Assembly (NCBI RefSeq): GCF_033153115.1
Contig: NW_026889803.1
Coordinates: forward strand, 27,404,001-27,468,000
Direction: 5' to 3'
Origin: Saccostrea echinata
Lineage: Eukaryota
Length of the DNA stretch: 64,000 nucleotides
The notes under the pieces were generated by a model, which was given only the letters and a program-made list of their open reading frames with translations, did no database searches and had not been told where the DNA came from. Both the position numbers and the translations under genes were made by a program. This document shows positions 34,501 through 43,739 of the stretch, piece after piece; position 1 is the stretch's first letter, and each line of letters starts with the position of its first letter.

Positions 34501-35421
34501 AGTGAAAACATAGATATGTGCCTCGTAAATAAGGCATCAATGCACTAGCTTCAGCAATTACATTTGCTAAACACTCACAATTACACCAAGCAAATAAAAA
34601 AAAATGTCCATTCCCAGATTTCATTCATCTCTTAACAATTACATGCATAGGGAAATGTTTTCAACCTGAATTTAGAAAATAGCAAGTGTAAAAGAAAAAT
34701 TCTAATAAAAATAAATGTTTACATTGCTACATAGAATTAAAAAGACACTTAAGAACACATACTTTGGAAATGAAAATGCCATAAACAAAAAAACATTTTT
34801 CTTCAAGTATTATATATAAAAATTTTCCAAGCAAAAATTACCCGGTAACTGAAGATTAAATTTTATGAGGGAGAATGGTTTACAGGTTACTGAAATATTT
34901 GTATGTATGAAAAAATAGAAAGACTAGACAATGTGTAACAATAGCAGATATATAACATAAATCTTGTATGATTTAATATAAATCAATTAACTTTGTAAGA
35001 TATGCAAGGCTGTAAAAAGTGCACAGTCTGTAAGTGAATACAGCTGAGGCGCTGACATGTATTGTTGTTCACCAGTAGTAACTTCAGTAGTAGAAGAGAG
35101 TAACCATAAATGTACACAAAGGCTTTTCTCTAACCATGAAGTGCAGACACCAGATTCTTGATCAAGTGTCTGAAAAACAAAAAACCAGATGTGAATTTTA
35201 CAGCAATTGTGCAAAAAATCTAATGAGTCTAAAGTTCAGATGAAATATGAAAGACAACTGTACAAATATAGGATTTAGGGTGACATCCACATAAATCAAT
35301 GCACCTTTTTTGGTTACCCTAACAGCAAAGTGAGAAATAAATAACAACACTCTTAAGGATCAGTTCTGCACCAATTTAGAATACAATGCTTACAGGCACA
35401 ATTTTTTTTTCAGAAAGACTT

Positions 35422-38400
35422 TCAACGTTGAGTTTTGAGGGTTACGGGTTTATACACAGGGGCCTTTGAGCGAGGTAGAGGTGGATTTCCAATGATGATA
35501 TCCGCTGCTTTTTCAGCAATCATAATTGTAGGTCCATTTAAGTTGCCACTAACAACACTAGGCATTATGGAGGCATCAACAACCCTCAATCCCTCTACAC
35601 CATACACTCGTGTACTGGGATCTACGACAGCCATGGGATCCGTCTCTGATCCCATCTTACATGTACATGAAGGATGATAGGCACTGTCTGCCATATTTCG
35701 ATTATATTCATCAATCTGTTTGTCAGTCTGGACACTGTCCCCTGGAGCTAATTCTGGACCTCTGAAGGAATCAAACGCCTTCTGTTGGAAGATCTCTCTT
35801 GTTAGCTTTATGCTGTCTCTCATTTCCCGTATATCCAACTCTGTTGTAAGGTAATTTGCAACCAAACGGGGATGCTCTTTGGGATCAGCAGATTTCAACT
35901 TAAGGTATCCTCTACTCGTTGGGCGCATTGGTCCTACATGAGCTTGGTAAGCATGTCTATCTCCTGGTTTCCTTCCATGGTCATTGACGGTAGAGGGAAG
36001 GAAATGGTACTGAATGTTGGGATGTTCGACTCCTGGCTCACTCCGGATAAATCCTCCAGCTTCCAGATGAGCTGTTGCTCCATCCCCTGTCTGCCTGAGA
36101 AACCATTCAAGACCAATCTTAATCATCACATGAGGAAACTTCCATTGGGCCTTGTAAAGTGTGATAGGCTTTTTACACTCTTGTTGAACATAGACTTCCA
36201 GATGATCCTGGAGGTTTTCACCAACCCCTGGTAGATGCTGAACAACTGGAATATCCAATTTTCGTAGATCATCTGCATTTCCAATTCCAGACAGCATTAG
36301 TAGCTGAGGAGAATTGATTGCCCCACCACTGAGTATGATTTCTTCTCCATAGACTGTCTGGATATCAGAATGCCTTTCATATTCTATTCCTACTGCCCGC
36401 TTGCCATTAAATATGATGCGTCTTGAAAGAGCACTGTTCAGTGTAGTCAGGTTGGCTCTTTCTTTTAAAATAGGATGTAGATATGCTGCAGCAGAACTGC
36501 ATCTCTTGCCTTTACCAATTGACATGTCCATCCATCCAAATCCCTCTTGTTGGAAGCCATTCATATCATCTGTGTATGGGTATCCTGCTTGAATTCCAGC
36601 TTCTATAAAAGCATTGAAGAGAGGGTTGTTCGTCTTTCCTCGGGATACCTGGAGTGGACCATCACCCCCTCTATAATCATTTGCTCCTAATTCATGGCAC
36701 TGAGCTTTACGGAAGTATGGTAGGCAGTCAGCATAGGACCAGCCCTTTGCTCCTTCTTTTTCCCACCTATCATAGTCCAGAGCATGACCTCGGATGTAGA
36801 CCATTGCATTGAGGGCTGAGGAGCCTCCCCAGACTCGCCCTCTGGGCCAATACATGACACGGTTGTTCATGCCTTTTTCTGGCTCGGTATGGTAATACCA
36901 GTTGTACTTGTCATCACATAAATTATACATTAAAGCAGCAGGCATGTAAATCTTCCAGGAATCCCAAGCCCACAGGTCACGAGGTCCTGCCTCCAGAAGG
37001 AGGACACTTTTAGCTCGGTCAGCAGTCAAGCGATTTGCTAAAGTGCACCCAGCAGAGCCAGCCCCAACAATAATGTAGTCATATTTGTTCTCCTTAGAGG
37101 ATATATGATCCATTCGCTGACTAGATGTGCTAAAATATCTACGAGGCTGATGTAAATGAGAAGCTCTCGATGATGATGATGGAAAGCTTGAAGCAAATAA
37201 TTTCCTACCTGCTCTCTGAGCTTGCTGTTTTGTGTTTTCAGTATAATTTTCATTTTGAAGAATAATATCAGAAATCCCTTCTATGCTAGGAATGATACTG
37301 TCTGCATACAGCTTCAACTGTTCCTCTGAACCCACGCCTGATAAAACTCCGATTTTCTGCTTGACGAAAGCAGACTGTCCCATCTGTAGATCTCCAACAG
37401 AATCTCCCACAACAATAGTTCTAGATGGACTAACATGTAGTTCATCACAAATCAACAAAGTGTTATGTCCTGATGGACGAGGCTGAGAAATTGGATCATC
37501 CCCACATATTAGCATATCCACATATTTAGTTAAACCCAAGTTCATCAAGTCTGAAATCACAAATTCTCTTGGTTCACCAGTATTAATGGCAATTTTCATT
37601 CCATTTTGCTTCAGTTCTCGGAACAATCCCTCAATATTGGAACACAGTGGTGATGGTTCAGCTTTCAGAATGACGTCTGCTTCTCTCCATATCTGGTTGA
37701 CAATCATGATGGCTTCCTGGTAGAATATCCCCTCCCTCCTCAGAGCCTCTACCAGGGCCCCTCTGACCTCTGATGGAGTGCCCTCTGATAGGACCCCATG
37801 CATCACTCGAGTAGCCTCTTTATTTAATCCAAGTAACCTACTGACTTTTTCTGACATGTCCAATCCAGTCATTTGCTTCAATCTAGAAAAAAATTAGAAA
37901 TATTTCTATTAAAAATTTATACAGTTTTAATAATTTCCAAGGCCAAAAAACGACCAGATTACAATTATCAAAAAAATAAAAATTATAACCGAGATGCAAA
38001 ACTCCTGAGAAAAATGAATAAAATTACTTCAGTATCAGGAGGTAACTCTCTTAAAATTTGACTTCATTAACAATGTAACTTACTACTAAACAATTATTTT
38101 ACCTAGAACAGAGAAATTCCACAAATTTGGGATATTTCCTATGTATACAGATGAGAGTTCCATGAAAATCAAATATCACCAAGTCTGCCGGGGCTTTCTT
38201 TGTGTTGGGTATAGGGGTATCCTGCTCAGTGGGTTCCACCAAAAACCTCTCATACTGGGAATAGGCGTAGCAACTCTTCAGGTCCTCTGAAGGTAAAATC
38301 AGGGGTAAAATATCCTCAATGTCATTGACTACATGGTCAGCATGAGGCAGCAAATCTCCTGTCTGCCCCACCCCACTTAGGACTCCCACACTCCACCCCA

Positions 38401-39824
38401 GCTTTGCTGACTTTCCTAGAAGCATGTCTGTTTTAGTATCTCCCACCATTACTGCATCAGATGGATCAATTCCCAGTTTCTCACAGATCTTCAATGCATT
38501 GTATGGAGCAGGTTTTGGTTCCGTATCGGGATCATCTCCACAAATGACATGCTCAAAGTACTTTGTTAAGCCTAGTTCCTGTAGCAAGGCATCTGTACCT
38601 TTGCGGTTGTCAGATGTAATGAGAGCTATTTTGACTTTGTTTTTCTGTAGGATTTTGAAGAGAGTCTCTAGATCTCCAAGCTTTTTCATTTCCTCTGGGT
38701 TTGTGACATTGCCCTCGGACCACACCGAGTCTAGAATTTCTCGTACTTGTGATTCTTCCATTCCCTCTCCAACCAACATCTTTGTCATTTCATCCTGAAG
38801 TATAAACAATCTTGTATATTTTCTGTAGTATTACCAATTTTTGTTTTGGAAGATAATATATAAATGATTTATTTACAAAAATAACCTTATCTATGACAAC
38901 AAGATGTGTTGGTGAAACACTATGTCTCAGACATCAACAGATTTCCTCCATTTTACATTTGACCTTGAAAGGGGGGAGGAATAAGGGTCAAGAGATTGAG
39001 ATACACTGTAACTGTCATACCTTGATCTCGCCAGATGTGGCTTCTGCCAGAAGTCCTGGCATCACCCTTTGTTTCTTGGTGCAAAAACCAAGGACATCAT
39101 AAATCTTGTCCTGGATCCCTTTACGACCAGTCGCTTCTTCAATACTGGAACAGAAATAACAATTTATTCATACAGGTTCACTACAGAGTACCATAGTTCA
39201 AACAGAAAAAGGAAATCATGTTATTCTTTAGCTTTCTCAAATGGGACTTTTCCATAGCGTTTTAGTGTGACATCTGATTTTTTTTTTTCTTTTTCTATAC
39301 AAATACTCTTAATATTGTAATCTGTTAACCTTTTGCATCTAAGTTTTCTGAATTATGAAAAAAAGGCTAACATTCAGAGACACTTTAAATTTACAAAAAA
39401 AAAAAATATATATATATACCTTGTGACTAATTTTTTGGCCCAAGGTGTCCACATTGAGTGAAAACATATTAGAGTGCCATCTTTGTCAAAAATGACAAGA
39501 GATGCTTTCTTAACTTTGTCTGTACGGCGTTTGACATTATTGACTGTAACACTGCCTTGGAAACTGGCTGCTGACCAAGACACATTCCTGGATTTCAAAG
39601 GCTTTCCCTGTTTATCTGTTTCAGAAAATATAATAATTAAAAGTACAGTTTTGATCAATTATGACTAATCACAATCTTCTGGATGTTGTTAATTAAAGCT
39701 TACATGATTTTCTTGAGATGCTGCATCCTACTGCAGTTGTATGAAGAGATCTGGACTGCACAAACCGCTGGGCTTGATAAGATCTCGTCATTACACGACG
39801 CAACAAATGTGTTCCTGACATCAT
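35422..39824 (-). CDS. CHDH: Mitochondrial fusion protein: presequence + 2x HAD-like hydrolase + choline dehydrogenase (GMC oxidoreductase), ~1197 aa, 5 coding exons
   Basis: Exons 39824-39704, 39615-39420, 39144-39021, 38794-38103 and 37882-35422 have GT/AG junctions and join in frame (3594 nt). HAD1 motifs: [28 protein letters not shown]2 motifs: [28 protein letters not shown]/BetA-CHDH motifs: [83 protein letters not shown]. Confidence 0.92.
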
Positions 39825-40107
39825 GAAGTATCTGTTATCAGTTACTTTCCATCAGAAAACCTATGAAAAAAAAAAAGAAATTAACAAAGATGTCAATCTG
39901 ATGAATGAGAAACCAGTCATCATGTGGCAACTTCCACTCCTCGTAACATTGAATCCTGAGTCTTCTATTCATATGTACACATCTGAAGTCTTATATGCCC
40001 AAAACTGAAGGATTCTCATAATTGAACGATTTTAATGCACAGACCAGTTAAGGTAATAAATTGTTAATCATCAATAATTTTGATGATGAAACTATTCATT
40101 GACAAGC

Positions 40108-40949: not shown

Positions 40950-43739
40950 ATATTGGTGAAGAGCAACATAATACAGACGGTCCCAGGTTCGACCCCCAAG
41001 ATGGGTAACTGCCTATAAAATTTAAATAAGAATATTACGTTTACAATTGTATTACAATGTCCATTTTATAGGTCTAATTACAACATCACTTACATGTTTA
41101 TAATGCTAATGCTTCACATCCACCATGTAGTCGTACAGTCAGTTTAATGTTAAATTCTTACTGAATGACCATGTCTGTCTGACCTTTCCTTTATCTATTC
41201 ATGGTCATCACACAGGGTTACCGAGTTCTTGGTCTACACCAGCATCACGTTAGTCTATCCCCCCCCCCCTTTCCAATAACCGGTCTTTTCAATAATCGTC
41301 AGATCTAACATTTTGATCAATTAATCCACTATATTGTCCATCACTGAGACATCGTACATAATGTACTGATGTCATTATTTAAGGCCTACCTGTAAATTTC
41401 TGTCAAACGAGTGCACCGGTTGATTTGTTGATACTGTAAACCGACAAGGCCTTGGAAAAAACACGGTAGTTTTCCAACATCGTGTGCTTTTCACGCTTCA
41501 TTGATAAGATTCTAAATACTAAGTAAAGGCGGGCCAATCAGAGCTCATTTTACATTACAAATCATGAATAAACATATCGGAAATGAGAAAATACACGCGT
41601 GTTGAAAACATGCGGTTCTTTTAAGGTTTTTTTTTAAAGGGGGGTCTTCATTATGATATTTAAGTTAATCATTACAGTTCTTGGGGAAAAATCAAATTAA
41701 ATTCGTTTAAGGACAGATGATAGAATAGAATAGAATATTTATTCAACCAATTTGGGCCCACAGTGGAGCATAAAGATGAACAATTAATGTCCGAAATCAT
41801 ATAAGTCATAAATAACAATAAACAGAACAAAACAAACAATTGTATATTGAACAGAGAGTTAGTCGTCAACTTTAAGGATGCATAAAATGTATACAAATAG
41901 TATATTCAATTTCAATTCGTTTATTGACCAATTAAGGGCACTCACAGGGCAAAAAGAAAGTACATTGTTAAAATGTATATAATGATTATGATCGTACACA
42001 CGAAATACAATATACATATACATAAGAGGGAAAGAATTGCTTGATTGATAGAAAAGACATACAAGTAGGGGAATACCCAAAATATTTTATATGAACATAA
42101 GACTTGTTTTATAGGTATATACATATGGAGATACAGTACATCATATATATATATGCATACATTAATAAACCATATACTTGAAAGTATCATACTTTTACAT
42201 AATTAATAATAATAATAAAAAAAAGTTACATTCCTTATGATAATGTTTTTTGGAAAAATCTTCCAAGAGAGTTTAGTATATTTAGTTCTTCGCAATTTAG
42301 AATCCAGAATAATTTTTGTTTATCAGGCAATTCTGTAAAATGTTTTACTTTGGATGAGATAAAGTTAAATAGGTCTTGTCTTTCCTTTGTAAATTTGCTA
42401 CAGTGAATAAGGAAATGTTCTTCATCTTCAATTTGATTAAGCGTACAATTTTTACATATTCTTTCTGATCTGGGTGTGTTATTATATCTGCCTAATTCTA
42501 TGAAAAGTCTGTGCGCTGATACACGTAATCTACATATTGGTTTTCTGTATTCAGGTTTTAATAAAATTAGATATTTTTCCAATCTAAAATTGTTCTTCAG
42601 AAATAAATAAGTGACAAGTTTGCCCTCTTTTAGTGTTTCATTTGAGTGTTGCCAATCAAGTGAGTATTTTTTATTCATGGATTGTTTTAATGAATTCATA
42701 AAATTACTCTTAGTATAGGACATTATGTTTGGGATATCAAGAATTTTTAGTAATTTTTCTATTGAGGAGTACCAAGTTGTTTTTTGGGCGAAATGAAGTT
42801 CCTTACTACATATAAATGCATCTTTTAGTAAAGGGAAATCTGAATTTAAATTTTCTAATCTGTAGCAATATTTAAGTAACATGTTGATAATATCATAATG
42901 TAAAGGATATCTACCTAATTCTGAAAGAGAGGCATGGTTCGTACTTTTCCTTTTCAAACCTAGTATAGTTTTACAGAACTTGATGTGTAAATTTTCTCCT
43001 GTAAAGTTTTTATAGCATAGTTGCATCAATATTTGATTAGATTGCTTTATTTTTGAATTATTAACATTAAATATTCCCCATATTTCTGAGCCGTAAAGTA
43101 ATATAGGCTTAATTGTGTGATCAAAGACATTGAGGCTAGTGGATATCCCATTATATGTATAATGACTGTAATATGCCTATATTGTACTATGTTGTTTTCT
43201 CATTTAAATGTTGGCATAATATAAAACAACAAAGTTAACTCAGAATCTTCATTTGACATTATCCATGTAAATAGGTCCACATTATTAAGCAGTATTAAAT
43301 TTGGAAAAGTTTTAAAGATTTTGTTTAAAAACTCTCCTCTAGAATCATTATACAATGGACATATTCTAGCAAAAAATGTATTTCATCCTCAGTTGGACTT
43401 GAAGTACAGTAACGACAGACTCTTTCACTCCTAGGAAGAATTTCATTTTAACCACATTTATTAAATATCCTTTCATATCTACCCGTCTCTACCCTTAAGC
43501 AATGATTACTAATTCTGAATTTTGTGAGAATTACCCCGATTGTCCCGGTTTTTCATATTAGTATTTTTCAAAATTGAATGACCTTTTATACTTAATCATG
43601 GAGGAGATTGTGTAAACACATCAAATAGTTTCAACAAGCAAGGATTGATAAAGTGTTGTGATGCTTTAAGCATTTCATTTGAAATATTGTCTAATCAAGG
43701 TGTTTTTTTTTTCAACTTAAGTTTAGAAAATGCTTCTTG

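What the first reader, a model, noticed from the sequence alone, without database searches (positions are those of the whole stretch)
37090..37260. Internal mitochondrial presequence with MPP-type site between HAD2 and CHDH: possible tandem precursor (polyprotein)
Seen: the linker [40 protein letters not shown] is Arg/Ser-rich, has no acidic residues for ~40 aa, and ends in RRYF-STSS just before the FAD-binding motif. The true N-terminus carries its own presequence ([30 protein letters not shown]). Established: R-x-[FLY]-S(T/S) is a classical MPP (R-2/R-3, or R-10 with Oct1) cleavage context, and MPP splits tandem precursors such as yeast Arg5,6 and S. pombe Rsm22-Cox11. Inference: the product is imported as one chain and cut into a HAD-HAD enzyme and a mature CHDH, giving stoichiometric co-delivery. 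This would be an unusual case in an animal.
Basis: partly seen in the sequence, partly recalled or inferred. Interest (0 to 1): 0.88.

Follow-up and report, generated by a model that had tools for sequence, protein, structure and literature searches.

The report
Cleavage-site motif inside oyster HAD-CHDH fusion
An oyster gene encodes two phosphatase-like domains and choline dehydrogenase as one mitochondrial protein, and their floppy linker holds a short motif, conserved across many animal phyla, that looks like a mitochondrial processing peptidase cut site, so the chain is probably split in two after import.

Summary
On the minus strand, one open exon (37882-35422) encodes the end of a second HAD domain, a 53-residue linker (37254-37096) and a full choline dehydrogenase (CHDH). 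Spliced transcript contigs from two studies carry the whole 1197-aa reading frame with no joint in the linker.

AlphaFold2 models the linker as disordered. It contains R-R-Y-F-S-T-S-S, 16 residues before the FAD-binding strand.

The main new result is conservation. Of 81 non-redundant HAD-CHDH fusions (molluscs, annelid, nemerteans, flatworms, acoels, hemichordates, crinoids, amphioxus, a copepod, a nematomorph, two protist transcriptomes), 85% carry R-x-[F/Y/L]-[S/A]-[S/T] in the last 60 linker residues. Shuffled linkers give about 3%. The motif occurs 0 times in about 66,000 other residues of a 77-protein subset. The rest of the linker is unalignable.

The motif matches the MPP/Icp55 (R-3) consensus and is also compatible with the MPP/Oct1 (R-10) consensus. 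It sits where stand-alone CHDHs end their presequence.

Best reading (about 0.7): a composite precursor cut in the matrix into HAD-HAD and CHDH. Cleavage itself is unproven.

The parts
39704..39824 (-). Coding exon 1: start codon at 39824 and the N-terminal presequence-like region. Together with the start of exon 2, the first 72 residues carry no Asp/Glu and 13 Lys/Arg.
   Evidence: ORF. Exon ends from transcript contigs, joint 39704/39615 with GT..AG on the minus strand. Composition.
39420..39615 (-). Coding exon 2: rest of the N-terminal extension and HAD1 motif I (F-D-K-D-G-T).
   Evidence: The boundary 39420 was fixed by the GT-AG and reading-frame check.
39020..39144 (-). Coding exon 3: HAD1 cap region.
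   Evidence: Transcript contigs. Frame check gives 1197 aa, matching P0001.
38103..38793 (-). Coding exon 4: HAD1 core motifs, an acidic HAD1-HAD2 junction without any MPP-type motif, and HAD2 motif I (D-F-H-G-T, second Asp replaced by His).
   Evidence: Pfam HAD_2/Hydrolase hits. Joints 38793/39020 and 37882/38103. No motif hits outside the linker.
35422..37882 (-). Coding exon 5, a single exon: rest of HAD2, the linker, the whole choline dehydrogenase, and the stop codon at 35424-35422.
   Evidence: 819-aa ORF. Contigs run uninterrupted from 37882 to 35300 in runs X1 and X2.
37096..37254 (-). Disordered inter-enzyme linker (exon-5 ORF residues 210-262, P0001 residues about 588-640).
   Evidence: AlphaFold2: pLDDT below 50 over residues 210-262 with no secondary structure, flanked by domains with pLDDT above 85.
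37186..37206 (-). Upstream weak site (R-K-L-F-A-S-S; relaxed K-x-F-A-S). It lies about four residues upstream of the columns where the global alignment places a second R-x-F-S-T island. 25% of the 77-protein set carry two or more strict motifs in the last 60 residues.
37120..37143 (-). Conserved core motif R-R-Y-F-S-T-S-S. The predicted MPP cut is between Tyr and Phe (37135|37134). Icp55-type removal of Phe would leave a Ser N-terminus at 37131-37129. Alternatively Oct1/MIP would remove an octapeptide.
   Evidence: Coordinates. Logo R 100% (anchor), F/Y/L 67/27/6%, S 97%, T 89%. Controls. Consensus motifs from PMC13672106 and PMC8835746.
35425..37083 (-). Choline dehydrogenase module, from [13 protein letters not shown] (FAD fingerprint, 37083-37045) to the last codon.
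   Evidence: Pfam GMC_oxred_N/C. NCBIfam betA equivalog TIGR01810 scores 753.6 bits against a cut-off of 732.1. Well-folded model.

Best explanation
The gene encodes a composite mitochondrial precursor: N-terminal presequence, HAD1, HAD2, a disordered presequence-derived linker, then choline dehydrogenase.

Proposed mechanism (inferred). The N-terminal presequence drives import into the matrix. The mitochondrial processing peptidase (MPP) removes it and also cuts the linker at R-R-Y|F-S-T-S-S (Arg at P2, aromatic at P1', Ser and Thr at P2' and P3'). An Icp55/XPNPEP3-type aminopeptidase then removes the Phe, or Oct1/MIP removes an octapeptide. A weaker upstream site may also be cut, releasing a spacer peptide.

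The products would be a HAD-HAD protein and a CHDH of about 569 residues (about 63 kDa), made in a 1:1 ratio from one mRNA.

Shown: one ORF and one mRNA, two folded modules, a disordered junction, and deep, specific conservation of the motif. Inferred: mitochondrial import, the identity of the protease, and the cleavage itself.
For: 1. A continuous ORF encodes HAD2, the linker and CHDH. Spliced contigs of 4631 and 3613 nt from two studies carry all five coding exons and show no joint in the linker.

2. The linker (residues 210-262) has pLDDT of about 30 between well-folded domains, so it would be accessible to a protease.

3. The strict motif R.[FYL][SA][ST] is found in the last 60 linker residues of 69 of 81 non-redundant fusions; the relaxed motif in 73 of 81. 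On the earlier 77-protein set, shuffled linkers give 2.9% and there are 0 hits in 65,921 other residues.

4. In a global alignment, R/F/S/T form a 67-83% identity island among columns of 10-30% identity.

5. The paralog L003 (82% identical in CHDH) has a rewritten, partly acidic linker yet keeps H-L-H-Q-P-R-R-H-F-S-T-S-S.

6. The predicted new N-terminus lies a median of 16 residues before the Y-D-Y strand. Stand-alone CHDHs carry F-S/A-T/S-type endings of their N-terminal presequence at a comparable place.

7. The stand-alone clam CHDH P0106 nests within the fused bivalve clade. Its N-terminal region aligns to the distal linker of the fused P0010. This shows that the linker and a true N-terminal presequence are interconvertible.

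8. The motif equals the published MPP-Icp55 motif (R/K at -2, then Y/L/F removed; PMC13672106). It also fits R-X|(F/L/I)-X-X-(T/S/G), the MPP/MIP motif (PMC8835746).

9. Precedents for internal MPP cuts: Arg5,6 (PMC8734313), Atp25 cut three times (PMC5063612), and mammalian ACAD10 cut at two MPP consensus sites in its linker (PMC11342911).

10. 34 of 69 fusions have no Met within 45 residues upstream of the motif, which argues against internal initiation.

11. M16 peptidase and AMP_N aminopeptidase loci exist in this genome.
Against: - There is no protein-level evidence. No N-terminomics, western blot or import assay was found for any species.
- No dedicated predictor (TargetP, MitoFates, iMTS-L) could be run.
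- The positive charge of the linker is only moderate (median top 9% of windows). The acid-free stretch is not conserved, so the presequence-like helix that MPP is thought to need upstream may be weak in some species.
- About 10-15% of fusions lack a strict motif. These include Lineus (nemertean), Schistosoma and Opisthorchis (flukes), and one Mytilus paralog.
- R-x-x-S also resembles basophilic kinase sites.
- Contig-based read evidence cannot exclude minor isoforms.
Confidence: 0.7

Rival explanations
1. The protein stays as one tri-domain chain. The conserved motif serves another purpose, for example an internal targeting-like element that helps import through Tom70/Tom20 binding, or a basophilic-kinase phosphosite (R-x-x-S) that regulates import or activity.
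For: Internal MTS-like elements that aid import without cleavage are described (PMC5881500, listed). R at -3 from Ser fits R-x-x-S kinase sites (my own knowledge). Fusion of sequential enzymes usually acts without cleavage. No protein data exist.
Against: What is conserved is not general amphipathic or basic character. It is four precise positions, R, F/Y, S and T, that match MPP subsites. Kinase motifs do not normally demand F/Y at -1 and T at +1. The motif sits in a 53-residue disordered tether. The same segment serves as a cleavable N-terminus in stand-alone relatives.
Confidence: 0.15
2. The linker is the N-terminal presequence of a CHDH-only isoform made from an internal promoter, an alternative first exon or internal initiation. 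The motif is conserved for that isoform, and the long form is not cut.
For: Some species are annotated with shorter isoforms (X2 entries of 1051-1056 aa in scallops). Contigs can miss rare transcripts. Half of the fusions do have a Met within 45 residues upstream.
Against: In this gene the linker lies in the middle of an exon. No joint or contig end falls there in four runs. There is no Met between the HAD2 core and the motif here, and none at all in the paralog's linker. 34 of 69 fusions lack any upstream Met. The scallop X2 forms are only about 140 residues shorter than the full-length models and their 510-515 residues before the FAD motif still hold HAD sequence, so they are not CHDH-only isoforms.
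Confidence: 0.07
3. The motif is a functionless relic of the presequence that CHDH carried before an upstream HAD gene fused to it.
For: Position and sequence correspond to the presequence ends of stand-alone CHDHs. The CHDH tree follows taxonomy, consistent with an old fusion.
Against: A neutral relic would have decayed, as the rest of the linker has: 10-30% column identity against 67-83% at the motif. The strict motif is more frequent in fusions (85%) than in the true N-terminal presequences of stand-alone CHDHs (19%). Paralogs with rewritten linkers keep it.
Confidence: 0.04
4. The fusion is an annotation or assembly artefact that joins two neighbouring genes.
For: Many database entries are automatic models, and some are labelled low quality or partial.
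Against: In this window there is no stop codon between HAD2 and CHDH, and both lie in one exon. RNA contigs span it. Independent ORFs of about 800-840 aa from many other assemblies show the same continuity. Three loci in this genome agree.
Confidence: 0.01

Closest known systems
Mammalian ACAD10 (HAD-kinase | ACAD), cut internally at MPP consensus sites (PMC11342911)
   Same: An animal mitochondrial multi-domain enzyme with an N-terminal presequence and N-terminal HAD domain(s). One of those HAD domains lacks the full DxD motif. An inter-domain linker carries more than one MPP-type site, and the C-terminal flavoenzyme is released as a separate protein. The authors propose the same rationale of fixed stoichiometry.
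   Different: The partner enzymes differ (kinase plus acyl-CoA dehydrogenase against tandem HAD plus a GMC-family choline dehydrogenase). ACAD10 cleavage is shown experimentally, whereas here it is inferred. In this case the site is conserved across many invertebrate phyla, and the fusion is absent from vertebrates.
Yeast and fungal Arg5,6 tandem precursor (PMC8734313)
   Same: One precursor holds two enzymes of one pathway. It has an N-terminal presequence plus an internal presequence-like junction cut by MPP, and the junction is conserved among species that have the fusion.
   Different: The lineage (fungal) and the enzymes differ. Arg5 and Arg6 form a complex, and nothing is known about a HAD-CHDH interaction. 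The pathway link between the HAD domains and CHDH is unknown.
Atp25 (PMC5063612) and the S. pombe Rsm22-Cox11 and Etp1 composite precursors (listed in PMC8734313)
   Same: Composite precursors with MPP motifs at the junction. Atp25 is cut at several sites, comparable to the double motif seen in many HAD-CHDH linkers.
   Different: Those join functionally unrelated proteins in fungi. Here the C-terminal part is the ortholog of a well-known metazoan enzyme that is stand-alone in vertebrates.
Stand-alone mitochondrial choline dehydrogenase (vertebrate CHDH; bacterial BetA, TIGR01810)
   Same: The C-terminal 553 residues pass the betA equivalog cut-off and group with animal CHDHs in the tree. The linker motif corresponds in position to the end of the CHDH presequence.
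   Different: Here the presequence-like segment is internal, preceded by about 590 residues of HAD-HAD. Bacterial BetA has no such extension (lengths of about 550-560 aa).

Membership tests
MPP-processed composite (tandem) mitochondrial precursors (Arg5,6 / Atp25 / ACAD10 type) | N-terminal matrix-targeting presequence | tested here: inconclusive
   The first 72 residues have no Asp/Glu and 13 Lys/Arg, the longest acid-free run in the protein. Orthologs have similar basic N-termini. No targeting predictor was available, so this rests on composition only.
MPP-processed composite (tandem) mitochondrial precursors (Arg5,6 / Atp25 / ACAD10 type) | Two independently folding enzymes encoded by one ORF and one mRNA | tested here: met
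   Continuous ORF. Pfam HAD and GMC domains. Spliced full-length contigs from two studies. AlphaFold2 gives two well-folded modules.
MPP-processed composite (tandem) mitochondrial precursors (Arg5,6 / Atp25 / ACAD10 type) | MPP consensus (Arg at -2 of the MPP cut, bulky hydrophobic residue next, Ser/Thr after it) at an accessible junction | tested here: met
   R-R-Y|F-S-T-S-S at 37143-37120 lies within the segment of pLDDT below 50. The consensus motifs are taken from PMC13672106 and PMC8835746.
MPP-processed composite (tandem) mitochondrial precursors (Arg5,6 / Atp25 / ACAD10 type) | Junction site conserved among species that carry the fusion | tested here: met
   69 of 81 strict and 73 of 81 relaxed. 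On the 77-protein set, shuffles give 2.9% and there are 0 hits elsewhere in the proteins. Conservation island.
MPP-processed composite (tandem) mitochondrial precursors (Arg5,6 / Atp25 / ACAD10 type) | Physical cleavage into two mature polypeptides by MPP | not testable with these tools
   This needs western blot, N-terminomics or an in vitro MPP assay. No such data were found in the searchable literature.
Choline dehydrogenase (BetA/CHDH, GMC oxidoreductase) | Full-length match above the curated equivalog cut-off, plus the FAD fingerprint GxGxxG | tested here: met
   TIGR01810 scores 753.6 bits (cut-off 732.1) and NF002550 scores 833 bits (cut-off 605). G-A-G-S-A-G is invariant in the alignment.
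HAD-IA phosphatases (phosphoglycolate phosphatase / PhnX-like) | Motif I D-x-D-G-T with both aspartates, and a score above a specific family cut-off | tested here: not met
   HAD1 has D-K-D-G-T, but HAD2 has D-F-H-G-T. All specific NCBIfam HAD models score below their cut-offs; only generic HAD-IA/IIIA models pass. This supports superfamily membership only, and the substrate is unknown.

The most novel reading that the evidence does not exclude
HAD-CHDH is an ancient composite mitochondrial precursor, shared across most bilaterian phyla (the two protist entries are unverified) and secondarily lost in vertebrates, tunicates and nematodes. Its internal MPP site has been kept under stronger constraint than ordinary N-terminal presequence sites. 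It would be the first phylum-spanning animal polyprotein of this kind, a natural model for how MPP finds internal sites, and a sign of an unrecognised phosphatase step coupled 1:1 to choline oxidation in betaine-accumulating invertebrates.
Probability: 0.55. Interest if true: 0.7.

Novelty: new member of a known kind. Interest (0 to 1): 0.6.

Why it matters
Internal cutting by MPP has been shown for only a handful of proteins, mostly fungal, plus mammalian ACAD10.

This case offers dozens of natural sequence variants across many phyla. They show which positions an internal site must keep (R, F/Y, S, T) and that such a site is more canonical than ordinary presequence ends. That makes the rules of internal MPP recognition directly testable.

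It also changes how invertebrate 'CHDH' genes should be annotated and interpreted. CHDH catalyses the first step of betaine synthesis in osmoconforming molluscs. In Saccostrea every CHDH copy found is fused to a tandem HAD module of unknown substrate.

If the chain is not cut, the result would instead define a conserved tri-domain enzyme, which is still undescribed.

Tried and rejected
- Acid-free run and net charge as evidence. The 42-residue run is about what chance allows (about 0.7 expected). It is absent from the paralog, and the charge rank is only moderate. I do not use these as main evidence.

- Internal initiation or an alternative isoform. There is no joint or contig end in the linker, no Met upstream here or in the paralog, and none in 34 of 69 fusions. 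I rank this low, but it is not excluded.

- Gene-model artefact. Rejected.

- Search for stand-alone relatives of the HAD module, to name its substrate. Only exon fragments from mollusc contigs came back. NCBIfam gave no specific family. A PDB search on exon 4 failed because I gave the wrong frame, and I did not repeat it.

- Literature on a HAD-CHDH fusion, or on oyster or bivalve CHDH protein size. Nothing relevant was found. One search call failed on syntax. One review did not contain the motif terms I searched for.

- Mature N-terminus of vertebrate CHDH from N-terminomics papers. Not pursued beyond, because the supplements were unlikely to be held.

- The spliced 1197-aa model was joined only inside a script, to check frame, length and GT-AG boundaries. 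It was not sent to any search. Searches used exon references or the database protein P0001.

Full report
**What is there**

The finding lies on the minus strand, in a gene whose last exon is one long open frame (37881-35425, 819 codons). Pfam places the C-terminal half of a HAD domain at ORF residues 60-195 and the two GMC-oxidoreductase domains at 267-789.

The quoted N-terminal presequence lies at 39824-39735.

Contigs assembled from sequencing runs of two studies were laid on 35300-39900. They skip 37883-38102, 38794-39019 and 39616-39703, each bounded by GT..AG on the minus strand, so they derive from spliced RNA. Single contigs of 4631 nt and 3613 nt carry all coding exons, and they run through the linker with no joint.

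A frame check with GT-AG boundaries gives these coding exons: 39824-39704, 39615-39420, 39144-39020, 38793-38103 and 37882-35422. The product is 1197 aa. That is the length of the database protein P0001 (Saccostrea echinata LOC133197787), which is 99% identical over the stretch searched. The joined model was used only inside that script and was not sent to any search.

**The three modules**

NCBIfam scores the C-terminal part above the curated cut-off of the betA choline dehydrogenase equivalog (753.6 against 732.1 bits). The two HAD domains match only generic HAD-IA models and fall below every specific family cut-off. HAD1 has the canonical D-K-D-G-T motif. HAD2 has D-F-H-G-T.

An AlphaFold2 model of the exon-5 product, built from a 56-sequence alignment, has a mean pLDDT of 86. 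HAD2 and CHDH are well folded. They are separated by residues 210-262 with pLDDT below 50 and no secondary structure.

**The key result: conservation**

The same architecture is widespread. HAD-HAD-CHDH proteins of about 1200 aa occur in bivalves, gastropods, cephalopods, an annelid, nemerteans and a flatworm. HAD-CHDH proteins of about 860-1120 aa occur in amphioxus, hemichordates, crinoids, a copepod, acoels, flukes and a nematomorph, and in two protist transcriptome entries.

Reading the 75 residues before the FAD fingerprint in all of them shows an R-x-[F/Y]-S-T-[S/T] motif in nearly every one, and often two.

| Measure | Result |
|---|---|
| Strict motif R.[FYL][SA][ST] in last 60 linker residues | 66 of 77 non-redundant fusions; 69 of 81 after adding sequences |
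| Same motif in composition-preserving shuffles | 2.9% (maximum 10.4% in 1000) |
| Same motif elsewhere in the 77 proteins | 0 hits in 65,921 residues |
| Relaxed motif in linker | 73 of 81 |
| Relaxed motif in shuffles | 8.6% |

Anchored on the Arg, the logo is [Q/P]-[R/K]-R-x-F(67%)/Y(27%)/L(6%)-S(97%)-T(89%)-[S/T]-[S/A]. The predicted new N-terminus lies a median of 16 residues before the Y-D-Y strand.

In a global alignment these four positions reach 67-83% identity, amid linker columns of 10-30%. A second, weaker island lies about 17 residues upstream.

Within this genome a paralog (L003, 82% identical in CHDH) has a rewritten and partly acidic linker but keeps H-L-H-Q-P-R-R-H-F-S-T-S-S. 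So the conserved feature is the motif. By simple arithmetic that character is not beyond chance, and the linker's charge rank is only moderate.

**What the motif means**

The published MPP-Icp55 pattern is Arg or Lys two residues before the MPP cut, followed by a bulky Tyr, Leu or Phe that Icp55 then removes (PMC13672106). The MPP-MIP pattern is R-X|(F/L/I)-X-X-(T/S/G)-X-X-X-X| (PMC8835746). The linker motif fits the first exactly and the second in most sequences.

It sits where stand-alone CHDHs of fish, amphibians, oomycetes and clams end their N-terminal presequence with similar F-S/A-T/S strings.

The CHDH-domain tree follows taxonomy. Vertebrate stand-alone enzymes form one clade, and a few stand-alone forms nest among the fusions. 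One of these, the clam P0106, aligns through its N-terminal region to the distal linker of the fused clam protein P0010. The same segment therefore works as a true N-terminus in one paralog and sits internally in the other.

Internal MPP processing is established for Arg5,6 (PMC8734313), for Atp25, which is cut three times (PMC5063612), and for mammalian ACAD10. ACAD10 also starts with a HAD domain and is cut at two MPP consensus sites in its linker (PMC11342911).

The oyster genome has M16 peptidase and AMP_N aminopeptidase loci, as expected. These hits are family-level evidence only.

**Mechanism proposed**

These steps are inferred:

1. The N-terminal presequence, which is acid-free for 72 residues with 13 basic residues, directs import.
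2. MPP removes it and also cuts R-R-Y|F-S-T-S-S, at 37135|37134.
3. Either the Phe is trimmed, giving a CHDH of 569 residues (about 63 kDa) that starts S-T-S-S, or an octapeptide is removed.
4. The relaxed upstream site K-L-F-A-S (37206-37186) may also be cut, releasing a spacer, as in ACAD10 and Atp25.
5. The acidic HAD1-HAD2 junction has no such motif, so the two HAD domains should stay together.

**Rivals**

- An uncleaved tri-domain enzyme whose motif serves import assistance or phosphorylation (0.15). This does not explain why exactly the MPP subsite positions are the conserved ones.
- A CHDH-only isoform that starts in the linker (0.07). This is disfavoured by the absence of joints or contig ends there and by the lack of any upstream Met here, in the paralog, and in 34 of 69 fusions.
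- A neutral relic (0.04). This is contradicted by the conservation, which is stronger than in true N-terminal presequences: the strict motif occurs in 19% of stand-alone CHDHs and in 9% of the fusions' own N-termini.
- An annotation artefact. Excluded for this locus.

**Limits**

There is no protein-level evidence, and no dedicated targeting or cleavage predictor was available. About 10-15% of fusions lack a strict motif, among them a nemertean, flukes and one mussel paralog. The read evidence comes from contigs, which cannot show rare isoforms or transcript ends. The HAD substrate is unknown, and a search for stand-alone relatives returned only exon fragments. No paper in the searchable library describes this fusion or the size of a mollusc CHDH protein.

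**Verdict**

It is a new member of a known kind, so it is less exceptional for an animal than claimed. It is still interesting for its breadth and for the unusually strict internal site.

Noticed in passing
L002 (G000:C30:35826750-35828408) and L003 (G000:C54:55548427-55550085): The genome holds a copy of the CHDH part on another contig that is 100% identical at the protein level (a haplotig or a very recent duplicate). It also holds an 82%-identical fused paralog 28 Mb away on the same contig. No stand-alone CHDH was found at E <= 1e-20.
   Followed up: partly
P0001-P0089 N-termini against linkers: The internal motif is much more canonical (85% strict) than the cleavage region of the same proteins' own N-terminal presequences (9%) or of stand-alone CHDHs (19%). 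This hints that internal MPP sites need stronger determinants than N-terminal ones.
   Followed up: partly
window 38120-38160 (HAD2 motif I); orthologs: In molluscs the second HAD copy has D-x-H/N-G-T in place of D-x-D-G-T. In the annelid Owenia it is the first copy that is altered (D-K-N-G-T), and a nemertean keeps both copies canonical. Either the duplications were independent or the copies decayed differently.
   Followed up: no
P0106 and P0099 (venerid clams): Stand-alone CHDH paralogs nest inside the fused bivalve clade and start with the distal linker sequence. They look like a natural fission of the fusion gene.
   Followed up: partly
P0069 and P0070 (EukProt transcriptomes): HAD-CHDH fusions with the same linker motif appear in two protist transcriptome sets and group with oomycete CHDHs on long branches. 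They could mean a pre-metazoan origin, or contamination.
   Followed up: no
window 39859 and beyond: All four runs' contigs continue past 39859 with the same unaligned letters. A further upstream non-coding exon of this gene therefore lies outside the stretch that was laid.
   Followed up: no
window 42235-43029 (minus strand): A 264-aa ORF with a Cys/His-rich tail looks by eye like the C-terminal part of a non-LTR retrotransposon ORF2. It was not tested.
   Followed up: no
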